Assembly: GCA_053919585.1 (NCBI GenBank)
Contig: CM132799.1
DNA: 64,000 bases
DNA from: Euprymna scolopes
Lineage: Eukaryota
Strand: one strand, 5' to 3'
Shown here: one piece after another, positions 26,472-33,199 of the stretch
Layout: each line of letters opens with the position of its first letter
How positions within the stretch are numbered: position 1 is the stretch's first letter
The notes under the pieces: model-generated
What the model was told of the DNA's origin: nothing
What the model saw: the letters and a program-made list of their open reading frames with translations, nothing else
The model's database searches: none
Made by a program: the position numbers and the translations under genes

Positions 26472-26525
<54 letters not shown>

Positions 26526-26556
26526 TTGTTTATTGTTATATAAACATGCTCACATC

Positions 26557-26613
26557 CCGCTGCTACAAACAGCCACTTGTTTCAATCAAACAACAGATAT
26601 CATCAGGCAGCGA
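26557..26613 (-). ncRNA. Type I hammerhead ribozyme (left arm)
   Basis: Exact reverse complement of the hammerhead at 31681-31737. Confidence 0.88.
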
Positions 26614-27564
26614 CTTGACTATTCAAAAGTTCAATGAATAATGGATTTTTATTTTAGGTAGGAACTCTTTAGAAGTTGGAGTTAAAAAACTTAAAACACA
26701 GGACTTTAATTAAATAAAAAAGTAAAAAGGGAGAGGCAATTTAAATAAAGTTAAAAGATTACAATGGGGAGAGAGTGATTGAGAAGAAAAAAAGGAATAG
26801 AGACAGAAATAGAGAAAGAAAATATAGAGAAAACAAAATAGAGANNNNNNNNNNNNNNNNNNNNNNNNNNNNNNNNNNNNNNNNNNNNNNNNNNNNNNNN
26901 NNNNNNNNNNNNNNNNNNNNNNNNNNNNNNNNNNNNNNNNNNNNNNNNNNNNNNNNNNNNNNNNNNNNNNNNNNNNNNNNNNNNNNNNNNNNNNNNNNNN
27001 NNNNNNNNNNNNNNNNNNNNNNNNNNNNCCCCCCCCTCCATATCACATATATATATATATATATATATATATGATACGGAGAAGAAAAGAAAAAAGAAAC
27101 AAAGGGTTATAATAAAGAGAATAAGAACTAGAAGGAAAAGGAAAGAATAATGAGATCTAGTTAAATAGAGAAAGAGAGAAAGTAAGAATTTGACAGTATA
27201 TAGAAAAAGAAAAAGAAAAAGAAAAAATCTGCGTGTCAACCAATTTATGAACAATTATACAATTCAGTAATGAAGCATATTATTACAAATACAAACAGAA
27301 GATACAATCCAAGCGTCAGAGATGAACGTGTCAAAAAAGGCAGGGAATGCATTCTGCTAGCATATTTATCCTCTTACATACGTCCACGAGTAAAATCAAC
27401 GCAATTCAAACATACGTCTACCATTAATTAGGCCCTTTATGCTAAATGATATAAGTTTAAAGTTTTCGCGTTTTTATTAGATAAACATATGAATAAAAAA
27501 AAAAAAAAAAAAAAAAAATAATGATAAAACAATATTAAAATTATTATTAATAACAATAAACATA

Positions 27565-27634
<70 letters not shown>

Positions 27635-28176
27635 CAGAATAAAATTAATATTTATTATCTTTTTAATATAACATATTTAGCCATAAGAGGGGATTAAATA
27701 AATTAAATAGGTCCAATAATTATAAATAAAAAACTACTAATATTTNNNNNNNNNNNNNNNNNNNNNNNNNNNNNNNNNNNNNNNNNNNNNNNNNNNNNNN
27801 NNNNNNNNNNNNNNNNNNNNNNNNNNNNNNNNNNNNNNNNNNNNNNNNNNNNNNNNNNNNNNNNNNNNNNNNNNNNNNNNNNNNNNNNNNNNNNNNNNNN
27901 NNNCTATACTATTAAGTTGGAAGTTTAAGCTATTTAAGTATAGATATAAAGTCATATTAAATCACAAAATAATACATTCAATACCAGATTACTAATAACA
28001 CAGATACAAGTACACTTACCTATAAATATATTCAGGCAAAAGAAGTAATTAAATCAACGAAATACTCAAAAATAGCGACGCACAGGTAGATAGTACCCTA
28101 ATTAAAAATAATAAGATACATATGTATATACTCACAGAGAACCAACCGACATACTAATAAGCATATATATATATAT

Positions 28177-28217
<41 letters not shown>

Positions 28218-28651
28218 TATAATCTTATGTATACACATACATACAAAAAATACACAAAAATATGCACACAATCATATACTAATACACAACAACGCACACA
28301 CACATATATATACTCACACATAAATATGTATAATTTACATAAATTATATATATAGAAATACATAAGAATACAAATAATTTGGCAAGGGTACAGATAGATG
28401 CATACACACATAGAAACATACAAATGGATTGAATAAACATGGGAGGGTATACCAAATAATATAGAAATATATAGATCTAAGTACACACGGTCATAAAATA
28501 AATACATAGACACATACATATACACATAGACACACATGTATATAAGATAGGAGAAGTAAAGAATGAAATCAGGAGAGGAGAAAGTATATTAATAGAATAT
28601 TAATAAATTATAGAAATCAGTGACAATTTTTAATTTATTTAAATTTTATAT

Positions 28652-29395
28652 CTAAACTAAATTACTTAAAAGATGGGTTTTATAATGTTTGCAATTAATT
28701 GAATTTTCGTGCTTCTTATTTAATAATTTATCTCTTTCTCTAAAAGTAAGTATAAATAATTTCTCATAAAGACATAGGTAGCAAGGCGAGTTTAAAGATG
28801 AACAGGTTTTCGCTTTCTTTAAAATTTTCCAATTTACTATTGGGGAGTAACCTTGCTCTACTAGTTCATTGTAATATTTAGACAAGGAAGTTCTATTTTT
28901 GTACTCATTATTTTCAAAAGAGCACTTGTGACCGGTAAATCTTTCTTTAAAATTGTTATTTGTCATTCCTATGTAATATTTTTTTTTCATTCGGATTTTC
29001 CTTAGTAGAAATAGTTGCTTGGTACACTACAGAAGTAATTTGACAATTTCCTTTAAGAGGGCATTTTGATTTAATTCTACAGTTACAACTTTCGGTAGCA
29101 ATGGGTGTGCTATTTTTGTTTAATATTTTGTTATTATGTTTTTTAATTATTTTTTCAAGGTTTTCATTACAACTATAACTAAGTTTTATTGTATTTTTAT
29201 TGAAAATTTTATGTAGTATGTTATTAATAGGGAAGTGCTTTTTAATTAAGTTTAAGAATTTCATTCCTAGATTTGTTTTAAGTTTCAGATTAAAAGGGGG
29301 ATTGTACCACAGGATTTTTCTCTTACGGTTTCTATTTGTATTTGTGTTTGGGTGTGTTGGTTCTATGAACTCAATTTGGGTGTTTTTTGTATCCA
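28652..29395 (-). pseudogene. C-terminal part of the Naiad-type PLE ORF: RT thumb/linker, Cys-rich motif and GIY-YIG endonuclease; 5'-truncated, +1 frameshift near 28985
   Basis: 'RKRKILWYNPPF...TNLG..FL.LIKKHFP....LHKIFNKNTIKLSYSC', 'CNCRIKSKCPLKGNC', 'SVVYQATI...YYIGMT..NFKERF..HK.SF', 'CYLCLYEK'. One extra A in an A-run splits the frame. Confidence 0.9.
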
Positions 29396-30075: not shown

Positions 30076-30126
<51 letters not shown>

Positions 30127-30670
30127 ATATATATATATATGCTTATTAGTATGTCGGTTGGTTCTCTGTGAGTATATACATATGTATCTTATTATTTTTA
30201 ATTAGGGTACTATCTACCTGTGCGTCGCTATTTTTGAGTATTTCGTTGATTTAATTACTTCTTTTGCCTGAATATATTTATAGGTAAGTGTACTTGTATC
30301 TGTGTTATTAGTAATCTGGTATTGAATGTATTATTTTGTGATTTAATATGACTTTATATCTATACTTAAATAGCTTAAACTTCCAACTTAATAGTATAGN
30401 NNNNNNNNNNNNNNNNNNNNNNNNNNNNNNNNNNNNNNNNNNNNNNNNNNNNNNNNNNNNNNNNNNNNNNNNNNNNNNNNNNNNNNNNNNNNNNNNNNNN
30501 NNNNNNNNNNNNNNNNNNNNNNNNNNNNNNNNNNNNNNNNNNNNNNNNNNNNNNNNNNNAAATATTAGTAGTTTTTTATTTATAATTATTGGACCTATTT
30601 AATTTATTTAATCCCCTCTTATGGCTAAATATGTTATATTAAAAAGATAATAAATATTAATTTTATTCTG

Positions 30671-30722
<52 letters not shown>

Positions 30723-31199
30723 TATGTTTATTGTTATTAATAATAATTTTAATATTGTTTTATCATTGTTTTTTTCTTTTATTCATATGTTTATCTTATA
30801 AAAACGCGAAAACTTTAAACTTATATCATTTAGCATAAAGGGCCTAATTAATGGTAGACGTATGTTTGAATTGCGTTGATTTTACTCGTGGACGTATGTA
30901 AGAGGATAAATATGCTAGCAGAATGCATTCCCTGCCTTTTTTGACACGTTCATCTCTGACGCTTGGATTGTATCTTCTGTTTGTATTTGTAATAATATGC
31001 TTCATTACTGAATTGTATAATTGTTCATAAATTGGTTGACACGCAGATTTTTTCTTTTTCTTTTTCTTTTTCTATATACTGTCAAATTCTTACTTTCTCT
31101 CTTTCTCTATTTAACTAGATCTCATTATTCTTTCCTTTTCCTTCTAGTTCTTATTCTCTTTATTATAACCCTTTGTTTCTTTTTTCTTTTCTTCTCCGT

Positions 31200-31233
<34 letters not shown>

Positions 31234-31680
31234 ATATGGAGGGGGGGNNNNNNNNNNNNNNNNNNNNNNNNNNNNNNNNNNNNNNNNNNNNNNNNNNNNN
31301 NNNNNNNNNNNNNNNNNNNNNNNNNNNNNNNNNNNNNNNNNNNNNNNNNNNNNNNNNNNNNNNNNNNNNNNNNNNNNNNNNNNNNNNNNNNNNNNNNNNN
31401 NNNNNNNNNNNNNNNNNNNNNNNNNNNNNNNNNNNNNNNNNTCTCTATTTTGTTTTCTCTATATTTTCTTTCTCTATTTCTGTCTCTATTCCTTTTTTTC
31501 TTCTCAATCACTCTCTCCCCATTGTAATCTTTTAACTTTATTTAAATTGCCTCTCCCTTTTTACTTTTTTATTTTTTTATTTAATTAAAGTCCTGTGTTT
31601 TAAGTTTTTTAACTCCAACTTCTAAAGAGTTCCTACCTAAAATAAAAATCCATTATTCATTGAACTTTTGAATAGTCAAG

Positions 31681-31737
31681 TCGCTGCCTGATGATATCTG
31701 TTGTTTGATTGAAACAAGTGGCTGTTTGTAGCAGCGG
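31681..31737 (+). ncRNA. Type I hammerhead ribozyme (right arm)
   Basis: Stem I CGCUGC/GCAGCG; core CUGAUGA (31688-31694); short stem II AUC/GAU; GAAA (31711-31714); stem III CAAG/UUUG; cleavage triplet GUA (31728-31730). Confidence 0.88.
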
Positions 31738-33199
31738 GATGTGAGCATGTTTATATAACAATAAACAAGTATTATCAGCTCTTTTTATTGAGCACTATCT
31801 AACAACCTCGTTGAATTCATTAGTCCATTACTTTTGAATATAAAAAAACCCCGAGTATATATATATATATATATATATATACATTTTAAATTTAAAGGCG
31901 TTAGACCAGTAGTCTAAAGGGAAGAGTGTATTTAAATGTGATAGTAAAACCCCTAATTTTATCAAAATACAAGAAAAAACACTGTTCGTTGTAATGCAGT
32001 TATATAATTAACTCGATAGCCACATATCCTAGAGCTACTTTAATATTTATATGTTATAATTCAAATTAAAATTAAAAATTAACAATCTGATTCATAAGGA
32101 GAAACTCAACAAAGCCAAAATATTTTACGATCGTTTCGGCAACTATGTTTTTTTATTGCAATAGACATTAAATAATGGGCAATAATTTTAACATTTTTTA
32201 AACAAAGTCTCCTCATCAGCAAAAATATTTGGTGGCTTTTTTTTTACAAAAGGCACCATAAATAAACCTAGCATTTTCTAAGTAAGGAAGATTTTTTTTA
32301 CATTGGAATCACCACTTAGCATGTCACTTGAGGATAAGGGTTTAAGAGTGTACAGTAGTCAATTGGACAATATAGTAATCGTTAGTAATGGAAATTCGGT
32401 AAACTTGAGAATTATTTCTTTATATAAAACAATACAACATATAAGATGATTTAAAGAAAATTTAGCAATTGAAACCATTGAAAACGGATGAGCAACGCTT
32501 TATAATATTATGTAATTCTTGATTGTATGTGCGAATGTTTAAAAAAGATGCATTAATGTATTGCCCTCATTTTATTATTTTGGTAATACTACTTCGGATA
32601 GAAACCAGTGTTGTGTTTTAATGAGCGTGCGCGAAATATATCATCATGTGAAAATATAAAGAATGTTTTAAATTTGCTTGTACGATTTGAAATTATATAA
32701 TCATAACCCTTCCTAAAATACCTAGTTCGAAGCTACTACCATATGATGTAGTTATGTAAATATCACTATATTATATTTTATTTAAAATATCGTTGTTTTC
32801 GGAAAAAAATACTCCAAAATTTATTGAAATATTTGTAAAACAATTTTCTATCGAAAACGACAATGTTTAAACTTGTATCACATCTGAGAAACCATCTTGC
32901 TTAGTATTTTACTACGTTAGACGAGTTGTTATAACTACACCATCATTTGGTCTGGGTCATTGTGACATTGTTTTTTCTGTACTAAAAATAATTCAGTCTC
33001 TGCCCAACGTTACTGTCTTCATTTTTCTAATTTTCAAATTAATCTTTGCTATAGTGTCTTAAAAACCTCCCACGTGTTCATTCTCTGTGAAATGTACCTT
33101 TTTGTTTATAATAATATATTGAACTCAATTTTTTCTCATACCCATTGGTGAATTATTTCAGGATTTTTTTTGGATAACGTTGAAATATCTTAAAGTAAC

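What the first reader, a model, noticed from the sequence alone, without database searches (positions are those of the whole stretch)
26522..31855. Young 5.3-kb palindromic Naiad-type PLE insertion with two outward-facing 3' ends
Seen: two ~2.3 kb arms that differ only in microsatellite and homopolymer lengths and a few substitutions. They flank a ~620-bp unique centre, both element 3' ends face outward into (TA)n, and no RT core is present. Established: PLEs encode RT plus GIY-YIG and are known to form inverted pLTR structures. Inference: both ends of one break were primed on element RNA, and the two 5'-truncated cDNAs were joined in the middle. Arms this long would give a >2 kb hairpin dsRNA on read-through, a possible siRNA/piRNA source or ADAR substrate, and a cruciform-prone site.
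Basis: partly seen in the sequence, partly recalled or inferred. Interest (0 to 1): 0.8.

Follow-up and report, generated by a model that had tools for sequence, protein, structure and literature searches.

The report
Head-to-head Hydra-clade Penelope-like element insertion
Two truncated, mirror-image copies of one young Penelope-like jumping gene sit head-to-head inside a (TA)n microsatellite of a cephalopod genome; this layout is already known for such elements, and the family belongs to the Hydra clade, not the Naiad clade.

Summary
Arms 26522-28834 and 29459-31772 are inverted copies. They differ by 4 substitutions in 1,940 comparable bases plus six run-length or microsatellite indels, around a 624-bp centre. 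(TA)27 lies on the left and (TA)13 on the right.

The clade assignment does not hold. A 99%-identical full-length family contig (L002, 708-aa ORF) has the reverse transcriptase upstream of a C-terminal GIY-YIG nuclease. [quoted passage not shown] That is the Hydra clade of Penelope-like elements, not Naiad.

- **Copy A (minus strand)** keeps only residues 465-708, with one frameshift.
- **Copy B (plus strand)** keeps the last ~60 residues.
- **Outer ends:** each carries an identical hammerhead-like motif that Rfam does not recognise.
- **The 83-bp "unique" right end** is the start of the family's 5' UTR, as found at a tandem-unit junction.
- **The centre:** a 16-nt filler, a 42-nt inverted copy of A's 5' end, and a 5-8-nt filler.

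The family is high-copy and transcribed. Inverted 5'-truncated copies are a published hallmark of these elements. This scan has noted similar palindromes on other DNA of this genome (s1-288497, and hammerhead-tailed SINE pairs).

No read or contig independently confirms the central junction, and no run shows RNA crossing it.

The parts
26471..26524 (.). (TA)27 microsatellite, left half of the target; it is also the tail of a short dispersed repeat (26410-26467)
   Evidence: TRF; sequence; repeat copies
26522..29395 (-). Copy A: a 5'-truncated Hydra-clade PLE copy, sense on the minus strand. It comprises a ~2.13-kb 3' UTR (26522-28651) and the ORF remainder (28652-29395). It corresponds to nt ~1558 to the end of the ~4.4-kb family unit.
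   Evidence: 99.3% identity to the full-length contig L002 over 28220-29398; protein 136/136 and 110/111 identical to P0269 residues 465-708
26558..26612 (-). Hammerhead-like motif of copy A, identical to the one in copy B
   Evidence: no Rfam match
26845..27028 (.). N run in the 3' UTR of copy A, mirrored by 31248-31441
27746..27903 (.). N run in the 3' UTR of copy A, mirrored by 30400-30559
28652..28990 (-). ORF piece 2: YIG half of the GIY-YIG nuclease, CxxC..E..N..CxH, natural stop
   Evidence: (Pfam GIY-YIG E=0.01)
28956..29395 (-). ORF piece 1: post-RT region, CxCX5C linker (CNCRIKSKC) and start of the GIY-YIG core. The frame breaks against piece 2 inside an A run at about 28975-28987.
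   Evidence: most family reads differ in run length at 28979 (table 4)
29396..29411 (.). 16-nt A/T-rich filler that forms the loop of the central hairpin; not element sequence
29412..29453 (+). 42-nt inverted duplicate of copy A's 5' end (family nt 1558-1599, sense on +). With 29353-29395 it forms a hairpin of about 43-50 bp.
   Evidence: 100% identity to L002 1558-1599; DNA fold -45.4 kcal/mol, z = -11.9
29454..29461 (.). 5-8 nt A/T filler between the 42-nt piece and copy B
   Evidence: mismatch at 29461; contig pieces break at 29462
29459..31772 (+). Copy B: a more deeply 5'-truncated copy (family nt ~2117 to the end). It keeps the last ~60 codons of the nuclease plus the 3' UTR.
30400..30559 (.). 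N run in the 3' UTR of copy B
31248..31441 (.). N run in the 3' UTR of copy B
31682..31736 (+). Hammerhead-like motif of copy B: 6-bp helix I, CUGAUGA, 3-bp helix II, GAAA, 5-6-bp helix III, GUA triplet. The predicted cut lies after 31730, 42 nt before the element end.
   Evidence: Rfam negative
31773..31855 (+). 83-bp 'tail': the first 83-86 nt of the family's 5' UTR. It follows the 3' end exactly as at a tandem-unit (pLTR) junction.
   Evidence: L002 nt 1-117 matches 31743-31858 at 98.3%; same contig seen as X13 record 1
31856..31881 (.). (TA)13, right half of the target microsatellite

Best explanation
This is one complex insertion of a young, high-copy Hydra-clade Penelope-like retrotransposon into a (TA)n microsatellite. 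The family unit is about 4.4 kb: a 142-nt 5' UTR, a 708-aa RT plus C-terminal GIY-YIG ORF, and a 2.1-kb microsatellite-rich 3' UTR with a hammerhead-like motif 42 nt from its end.

Shown: two copies of the same source lineage lie head-to-head with their 3' ends outward. Neither has the RT core. The right copy runs 83-86 nt past the canonical 3' end into the 5' UTR of a following tandem unit. The join between the copies contains a 16-nt filler, a 42-nt inverted copy of A's 5' end and a 5-8-nt filler.

Inferred mechanism: the element's nuclease cut both strands of the self-complementary (TA)n target, and each 3'-OH primed reverse transcription of family RNA (UA-ended or UAU-containing sites pairing with TA repeats). 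The left-primed cDNA stopped at family nt ~1558 and added untemplated A/T-rich bases. It then copied an antisense strand for 42 nt, either its own snapped-back end or the other cDNA, and finally continued on the right-primed cDNA to the other side of the break.

A variant of the same model: both cDNAs reached nt ~1558, giving a near-perfect 5.7-kb palindrome. A later centre-proximal deletion of about 520 bp with filler then made it asymmetric and more stable.

The locus itself is non-autonomous and most likely inert.
For: Family identity and domain order: P0001 is 99% identical, with YRDDGL upstream of the nuclease. L002/P0269 is the full-length ORF, with ADKT at 114, FDIVNYYPSI at 251, YRDDG at 346, CNCRIKSKC at 565, CYLCLYE at 666 and CKH at 696. 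Relatives carry RWK/RWR, ADKT and an invariant CxCX5C, with no Cys inside the GIY-YIG core. This matches the published Hydra definition.

Same source for both arms: 4 substitutions in 1,940 bp. Both arms share alleles that are rare or absent among family reads, for example G at 30789 (0 of 18 reads), A at 29756 and A at 30204 (table 3).

Right arm not copied from the left arm: the 83-bp tail is present only on the right and equals L002 nt 31-117.

(TA)n on both sides. Many other family copies end at 31772 followed by (TA)n (table 7).

The whole arm is family sequence: raw-read depth is 24-150 per orientation along the arm, against 0-1 in the flank (table 2).

Short inverted 5' ends recur. The second, divergent copy in the window starts with its own hairpin at 52391-52462. 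Many head-to-head joints occur at 31652/31653 in two DNA runs (table 5).

The published PLE layout includes an adjacent inverted 5'-truncated copy and a one-sided tail.
Against: No read or contig was shown to span the central junction (29388-29461) or the whole structure. In X13 (DNA) and X14 (RNA), contigs run through nt 29387 into RT sequence of other copies instead. Differences between the arms are concentrated in homopolymers and microsatellites, which is also what consensus errors look like. Four N runs interrupt the arms. The order of template switches is inference and cannot be read from the sequence. A target-site duplication cannot be scored inside a microsatellite. Rfam models do not recognise the hammerhead-like motif, and its helix II has only 3 bp.
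Confidence: 0.68

Rival explanations
1. Assembly artefact. Only one 5'-truncated copy, or two copies at different loci, exists, and the mirror arrangement was produced by a fold-back chimeric read or by mis-scaffolding of a family that has hundreds of copies.
For: The family is high-copy (table 2). The arms are interrupted by N runs. Arm differences are almost all run-length differences. No independent sample showed the junction. The junction protein products are not on record elsewhere, and the junction string is absent from JGI metagenome contigs. The PLE paper itself warns that such structures trouble assemblies.
Against: The structure is internal to the sequence, and its two flanks differ and are not mirror images. 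The centre is asymmetric, with fillers and a 42-nt piece, whereas a technical fold-back gives one exact symmetry point. The tail is on one side only. All junctions lie in one gap-free 2.5-kb stretch. The arms carry shared private alleles rather than the family consensus.
Confidence: 0.17
2. Two independent insertions of the same family, in opposite orientation, into the same (TA)n microsatellite at different times.
For: (TA)n is the family's preferred target, so repeated hits are plausible. The two copies are truncated at different points and only one has the tail.
Against: No (TA)n remnant lies between the two 5' ends; only 16-nt and 5-8-nt fillers and an inverted 42-mer are there. The arms share a dozen minority alleles and differ by at most 4 substitutions, while family reads are polymorphic at many sites.
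Confidence: 0.08
3. DNA-level origin. Either a foldback-type DNA transposon with 2.3-kb terminal inverted repeats, or a post-insertion inverted duplication made by a replication template switch at the central hairpin.
For: The long inverted repeats and a strong central hairpin resemble foldback elements and hairpin-driven rearrangements.
Against: The arms are collinear with the 3' two-thirds of a retroelement unit and cut through its ORF. There is no transposase. The right arm carries 83 bp that the left arm lacks, so it was not templated on the left arm. The element ends match those of hundreds of ordinary 5'-truncated copies.
Confidence: 0.07

Closest known systems
Hydra clade of C-terminal EN+ Penelope-like elements (Craig, Yushenova, Rodriguez, Arkhipova 2021, PMC8557442)
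   Same: Single ORF with RT followed by a C-terminal GIY-YIG nuclease. DKT instead of DKG. CxCX5C linker. No CCHH inside the GIY-YIG core. CxxC and CxH flank the catalytic E and N. Inserts into (TA)n. A hammerhead-type motif lies near the 3' end. Known hosts include Mollusca. The closest named relatives are from sea cucumbers and a coral.
   Different: The unit is about 4.4 kb rather than under 3 kb, because of a 2.1-kb microsatellite-rich 3' UTR. The N-terminal motif reads KWK rather than RWK in this family. The hammerhead-like motif has a weak helix II and is not called by Rfam. Copy number is very high and the copies are young.
Generic PLE insertion architecture (pLTR tandems, adjacent inverted 5'-truncated copy, one-sided tail)
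   Same: 5' truncation, an inverted partner copy, a tandem-junction sequence and a tail at one end only.
   Different: There is no full-length copy in the unit, since both partners are truncated. The tail is 83-86 bp rather than 30-40 bp and can be identified as the start of the 5' UTR. A short inverted duplicate with fillers sits at the join.
Naiad clade PLEs
   Same: GIY-YIG nuclease with an upstream Cys-rich linker, (TA)n preference, complex tandem or inverted insertions, abundance in molluscs.
   Different: Naiads have the nuclease at the N-terminus followed by a KR-rich block, a CxC motif and RT. They keep CCHH, have DKA and lack canonical hammerheads. None of this fits here.
L1 twin priming (Ostertag and Kazazian 2001; from memory)
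   Same: Both 3'-OH ends of the target break prime cDNA synthesis, giving an inverted segment joined by microhomology or filler.
   Different: In L1 the second primer anneals internally on the same RNA, so the two segments are adjacent parts of one copy. Here both segments start at or near the RNA 3' end and duplicate each other.

Membership tests
Hydra clade PLE | [quoted passage not shown] | tested here: met
   Full-length family contig L002/P0269 (99% identical to copy A): FDIVNYYPSI at 251, YRDDG at 346, nuclease at 565-708, then a stop. In the window both copies stop 25-30 codons after CxxC..E. The RT part is absent from this locus itself.
Hydra clade PLE | DKG motif changed to DKT; RWK motif present | tested here: met
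   ADKT at residue 114 of P0269. ADKT is also in P0007, P0128, P0112 and P0088. RWK/RWR occurs in P0007 and P0128, and KWK in P0269. Tested on family members, not on the truncated locus.
Hydra clade PLE | Linker Zn-finger modified to CxCX5C | tested here: met
   CNCRIKSKC is encoded in copy A (28956-29395, minus strand). These cysteines are invariant in the 10-sequence alignment.
Hydra clade PLE | No CCHH motif inside the GIY-YIG core; CxxC and CxH on either side of the catalytic E and N | tested here: met
   No Cys lies between VVYQAT and YYIGMT. CYLCLYE and CKH are present and invariant.
Hydra clade PLE | Insertion into (TA)n | tested here: met
   (TA)27 and (TA)13 flank the unit. Other copies end at 31772 followed by (TA)n in three runs (table 7).
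Hydra clade PLE | Canonical hammerhead ribozyme motif | tested here: inconclusive
   The full core (CUGAUGA, GAAA, GUA) has 6-bp helix I and 5-6-bp helix III. It occurs twice in the window, against 2 hits in 200 shuffles under looser criteria. The majority family variant at 31724 turns a G-U pair into A-U. But helix II has only 3 bp, and no Rfam hammerhead model matches even at E<=10.
Hydra clade PLE | Placement in the Hydra clade of an RT phylogeny with reference PLEs | not tested
   No reference Repbase sequences were available; the paper's supplements are not held.
Naiad clade PLE | N-terminal GIY-YIG nuclease followed by a CxC linker and C-terminal RT | tested here: not met
   The order is RT then nuclease, and the Cys-rich linker lies upstream of the nuclease.
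Naiad clade PLE | CCHH inside the GIY-YIG core; DKA motif; no canonical hammerhead | tested here: not met
   No core cysteines; ADKT; a hammerhead-like motif is present.
PLE complex insertion (inverted 5'-truncated partner, pLTR junction, tail) | Inverted 5'-truncated copy adjacent to another copy's 5' end, a tandem-junction sequence, and a tail at one end | tested here: met
   compared with the description read.
Foldback or TIR DNA transposon | Terminal inverted repeats that define the mobile unit, a target-site duplication, and a transposase or derivation from one | tested here: not met
   The arms are retroelement 3' parts that cut through an ORF. The ends are asymmetric because of the 83-bp tail. 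There is no transposase.

The most novel reading that the evidence does not exclude
Because (TA)n is self-complementary, both nicked strands offer the same primer to a UA-ended template. Hydra-type (and perhaps Naiad-type) PLE integration would then be intrinsically two-sided, and mirror-image insertions would be its direct footprint. At this locus both cDNAs would have run to the same RNA 5' end (family nt ~1558). The RT would have jumped from that end onto the opposite cDNA across a 16-nt untemplated bridge, and the resulting 5.7-kb near-perfect palindrome would later have been stabilised by a ~520-bp centre-proximal deletion. If so, the many palindromic PLE and SINE copies in this cephalopod would be a natural data set for dissecting PLE target-primed reverse transcription and palindrome decay.
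Probability: 0.25. Interest if true: 0.5.

Novelty: new member of a known kind. Interest (0 to 1): 0.3.

Why it matters
It corrects the annotation from Naiad to Hydra clade. It documents a recently active, high-copy Hydra-clade family in a cephalopod: an intact 708-aa ORF in public contigs, copies 99% alike, and abundant in poly(A) RNA contigs. The unit is larger than those described for the clade.

The locus is also a clean specimen of the inverted-twin PLE insertion, with readable junctions. The tail is identified as the start of the 5' UTR, and the join shows fillers and an inverted 42-mer. These details bear on how PLE reverse transcriptase switches templates, which is still unknown for lack of an in vitro system.

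In itself the locus is a dead, non-coding repeat with no sign of function.

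Tried and rejected
- **Rfam search:** scans of 24000-34000 (E<=1) and of 31640-31790 (E<=10) gave no hammerhead family, only generic hairpin or snoRNA noise.
- **Pfam on the two ORF pieces:** only a sub-threshold GIY-YIG hit, E=0.01. Pfam on ten homologues at E<=0.01 gave nothing.
- **ARAGORN on the left flank:** no tRNA found, despite a B-box-like GGTTCGAGCC followed by a T9 run.
- **Junction-spanning ORFs:** exact-product look-ups of 28956-29441 (minus) and 29200-29460 (plus) found nothing on record.
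- **JGI metagenome contigs:** exact scans for the junction string and for the hammerhead core string gave 0 matches.
- **Read laying:** I gave it 28700-32100 rather than both full arms, so as not to send a long repeat. As a result, left-arm reads were laid on the right arm, and the 'opposite strands' joints at 28700/29594 and 28832/29462 are artefacts of that choice, not biology. The raw-read run X44 is a linker-ligation library read at about 1x, so it could not confirm a single-copy junction.
- **Earlier-findings look-up by sequence:** blank, which means nothing here.
- **Supplements of PMC8557442:** not held, so there was no direct comparison with Repbase Hydra sequences and no phylogeny.
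- **Naiad assignment, foldback transposon and replication-based inverted duplication:** considered and rejected for the reasons given under the rival explanations.

Full report
**1. What is in the sequence**

A repeat search and a self-BLAST show a large inverted repeat. Segment 26522-26844 pairs with 31772-31442, 27029-27745 with 31247-30560, and 27904-28834 with 30399-29459.

Global alignment of the three gap-free segment pairs gives 4 substitutions in 1,940 comparable positions. It also gives six indel events, all in an A run, (AAT)n, (AT)n, a poly-C edge or an 8-bp A-rich duplication.

The arms are 2,313 and 2,314 bp if the N runs are taken at face value. The centre is 28835-29458 (624 bp). 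TRF finds (TA)27 at 26471-26524, directly abutting the left arm. It finds (TA)13 at 31856-31881, which is separated from the right arm by 31773-31855.

The four N runs lie at mirrored element positions and have similar lengths. All are in non-coding 3' sequence, so no frame question arises. Their content was not looked up. Continuity across them is supported only indirectly:
- the mirror-image order of the flanking segments;
- contig L003, which carries pieces of the two outer segments downstream of the ORF in the same order and orientation;
- raw-read depth, which is family-like all along the arm.

All junctions of interest lie in the gap-free stretch 27904-30399.

**2. What the element is**

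On the minus strand the centre and inner left arm hold two ORF pieces, 28956-29441 and 28652-28990. Together they read as a Cys-rich linker (CNCRIKSKC), a GIY-YIG core, CYLCLYE, a conserved N, CKH and a stop.

An exhaustive HMMER search with the first piece found 5,220 relatives. The best is a 387-aa protein, 99% identical, whose upstream part carries GLYRDDGL and VNFLDV. Its cluster holds a 708-aa member, P0269, encoded on a 2,731-nt public contig, L002.

L002 is 99.3% identical to 28220-29398 and 99.2% identical to 29459-30073. Its ORF carries these motifs in order:

| Motif | Residue in P0269 |
|---|---|
| KWK | 37 |
| ADKT | 114 |
| FDIVNYYPSI | 251 |
| YRDDG | 346 |
| CNCRIKSKC | 565 |
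| CYLCLYE | 666 |
| CKH | 696 |

So RT precedes a C-terminal nuclease.

In an alignment with nine relatives the following hold:
- the CxCX5C cysteines, the CxxC, E and N residues and CxH are invariant;
- no cysteine lies inside the GIY-YIG core;
- the longer relatives carry RWK/RWR and ADKT.

This is, point for point, the published description of the Hydra clade. That description covers a C-terminal nuclease, DKT, RWK, CxCX5C, loss of CCHH, CxxC and CxH motifs, (TA)n insertion, detectable hammerheads, and hosts in Cnidaria, Mollusca, Echinodermata and Arthropoda.

Named relatives come from two sea cucumbers and a coral. None of these is met.

**3. Anatomy of the insertion against the full-length unit**

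Taking L002 plus the left arm as the unit gives about 4.4 kb: a 142-nt 5' UTR, a 2,127-nt ORF and a 3' UTR of about 2.13 kb.

- **Copy A** (minus strand, 26522-29395) starts at family nt ~1558. It encodes residues 465-708, with 136/136 and 110/111 identical residues. It has a single frame break inside an A run at about 28975-28987. Most family reads differ in run length at that place (table 4).
- **Copy B** (plus strand, 29459/29462-31772) starts at family nt ~2117-2120 and keeps the last ~60 codons.
- **Between them** lie a 16-nt A/T-rich filler (29396-29411), a 42-nt piece (29412-29453) and a 5-8-nt filler. The 42-nt piece is 100% identical to family nt 1558-1599 in sense orientation, so it is the exact inverted duplicate of copy A's 5' end. 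The 42-mer and its partner form a strong hairpin (-45.4 kcal/mol as DNA, z = -11.9).
- **The 83 bp after the right arm** are not unique flank. L002 nt 1-117 matches 31743-31858, so the canonical 3' end is followed directly by the start of the 5' UTR, as at a tandem (pLTR) junction. Copy B simply begins 83-86 nt further downstream on such a template, at a UAU that matches the TA repeat.

This is the one-sided 'tail' described for PLEs, here with an identified origin.

**4. Hammerhead-like motif**

At 31682-31736 (+) and 26558-26612 (-) the two arms carry an identical motif. It has a 6-bp helix I, CUGAUGA, a 3-bp helix II, GAAA, a 5-6-bp helix III and a GUA triplet.

A pattern scan finds only these two in the window, against 2 hits in 200 shuffles. 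The majority family allele at 31724 converts a G-U pair of helix III into A-U.

Even so, no Rfam hammerhead model matches, even in a 151-nt search at E<=10, and helix II is weak. I therefore call it hammerhead-like, with activity untested.

**5. Evidence from public runs**

In raw genomic reads read at roughly 1x (X44), depths per read orientation are:

| Region | Depth per orientation |
|---|---|
| Right flank | 0-1 |
| Body and 3' UTR of the element | 24-150 |
| Last ~120 nt, carrying the hammerhead-like motif | about 1,500 |

The family is therefore present in hundreds of copies at 95% identity or more, and its 3' end is far more abundant still.

Contigs of three runs end at 31772 followed by (TA)n, which confirms the canonical end and the target.

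Both arms share alleles that are rare among family reads, such as 30789 G, 29756 A, 30204 A and the 30920-31000 cluster. One arm-specific base (30797 T) has no read support. The arms are thus each other's closest relatives, not a family consensus.

Poly(A) RNA contigs (X14) cover the family strongly, which shows the family is present in an RNA library. They do not cross the centre (depth 7.7 against about 360) and do not reach the right flank (depth 0).

The junction 29388-29461 is not seen in X13 or X14, whose contigs continue into RT sequence of longer copies. It cannot be resolved in X25 or X44. Independent confirmation of the palindrome is therefore missing.

**6. Mechanism**

Shown:
- two copies from the same source, 3' ends outward, in a (TA)n;
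- the right copy was templated beyond the left copy's end, so it is not a copy of the left arm;
- the plus strand reads as one continuous path: antisense copy A, filler, 42 nt of sense, filler, sense copy B.

Inferred: nicks on both strands of the self-complementary target each primed reverse transcription. The left cDNA stopped at nt ~1558, received untemplated bases and copied 42 nt of an antisense strand. That strand was either its own snapped-back end or the other cDNA. It then continued on the right cDNA.

A short inverted 5' duplicate without a long partner is also seen in the second, divergent Hydra-type copy of this window (52391-52462). Head-to-head joints are frequent at 31652/31653 in two DNA runs. 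Snap-back at the 5' end therefore looks like a regular by-product in this genome.

The alternative reading is that both cDNAs reached nt 1558 and about 520 bp were later deleted next to the centre. It explains why both halves start at the same nucleotide. It also fits what is known from memory about the instability of perfect palindromes.

**7. Rivals**

- **Assembly artefact (0.17)** is the main one. It is disfavoured by the differing flanks, the asymmetric centre with fillers, the one-sided tail and the private shared alleles. It is not excluded.
- **Two independent insertions (0.08)** is disfavoured by the absence of (TA)n between the 5' ends and by the near-identity of the arms within a polymorphic family.
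- **DNA-level foldback or duplication (0.07)** is disfavoured by the collinearity with a retroelement unit and by the extra 83 bp on the right.

**8. Comparison and novelty**

Inverted 5'-truncated partner copies, pLTR junctions, tails, microsatellite targets and assembly trouble are all described for PLEs. Earlier notes of this scan report another 5.3-kb ribozyme-capped palindrome around a truncated GIY-YIG gene on other DNA of this genome (s1-288497). They also report many hammerhead-tailed SINE copies inserted as inverted pairs in what is described as a cephalopod. I did not test those.

The locus is therefore a new member of a known kind. The useful additions are:
- the clade correction;
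- the full-length reference for the family;
- the identification of the tail;
- the base-level reading of the central join.

The one RNA run laid gives no support for them.

Noticed in passing
window 52391-53380: A second, divergent Hydra-type PLE remnant lies on the plus strand, 40-52% amino-acid identity to the first. It comprises a GIY-YIG C-terminal part with one frame break, a natural stop at 52827, a short 3' region (with an N run) and an end in (TA)n at about 53355-53380. Its 5' truncation point carries its own inverted duplicate of about 29 bp (hairpin 52391-52462).
   Followed up: partly
window 31653-31772 (and mirror 26522-26641): In raw reads the terminal ~120 nt carrying the hammerhead-like motif is about 20 times more abundant than the element body. 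It has a sharp 5' boundary at 31652/31653, varied upstream sequence and many head-to-head joints there. This suggests a very abundant short hammerhead-bearing derivative (SINE- or retrozyme-like) that shares this family's 3' end at 95% identity or more. This Hydra-clade family is therefore a candidate autonomous partner for it.
   Followed up: partly
window 26410-26467; also 18000-18053 (-), 43652-43683 (-), 52351-52388 (-): A short dispersed repeat occurs four times at 80-85% identity: a T-run, then GCTCAACA..ACACCTCCAAACAC..GCAACGCCGGGCAC. It runs directly into (TA)n in the two copies where the 3' side is readable. It probably supplied the microsatellite that the PLE hit. One copy abuts the 5' hairpin of the second PLE remnant.
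   Followed up: partly
window 26375-26418: A B-box-like GGTTCGAGCC sits in a tRNA-T-arm-like context and is followed by a T9 run, just upstream of the repeat above. ARAGORN calls no tRNA.
   Followed up: partly
L003 1296-1849: A public contig of the same family lacks most of the nuclease and 3' UTR. It jumps from the equivalent of window 29083 to 27273-27227 and then to 26601-26550, and it has lost the CUGAUGA box. It is either a deletion derivative or a chimeric contig. Its first 1,295 nt are unrelated to L002.
   Followed up: no
whole window: The 64 kb hold sixteen N runs of 130-260 nt. Within the palindrome they fall at mirrored element positions with near-equal lengths, so their placement follows sequence content. 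Contigs from other samples run into them with ordinary-looking sequence. The gaps were not filled.
   Followed up: no
run X44 laid on window 31673-31748: Hundreds of loose ends share the palindromic string AGGTTCGTCCATCGATCGATGGACGAACCT. This is a library linker of that proximity-ligation-type run, not biology. It makes that run unsuitable for calling joints.
   Followed up: no
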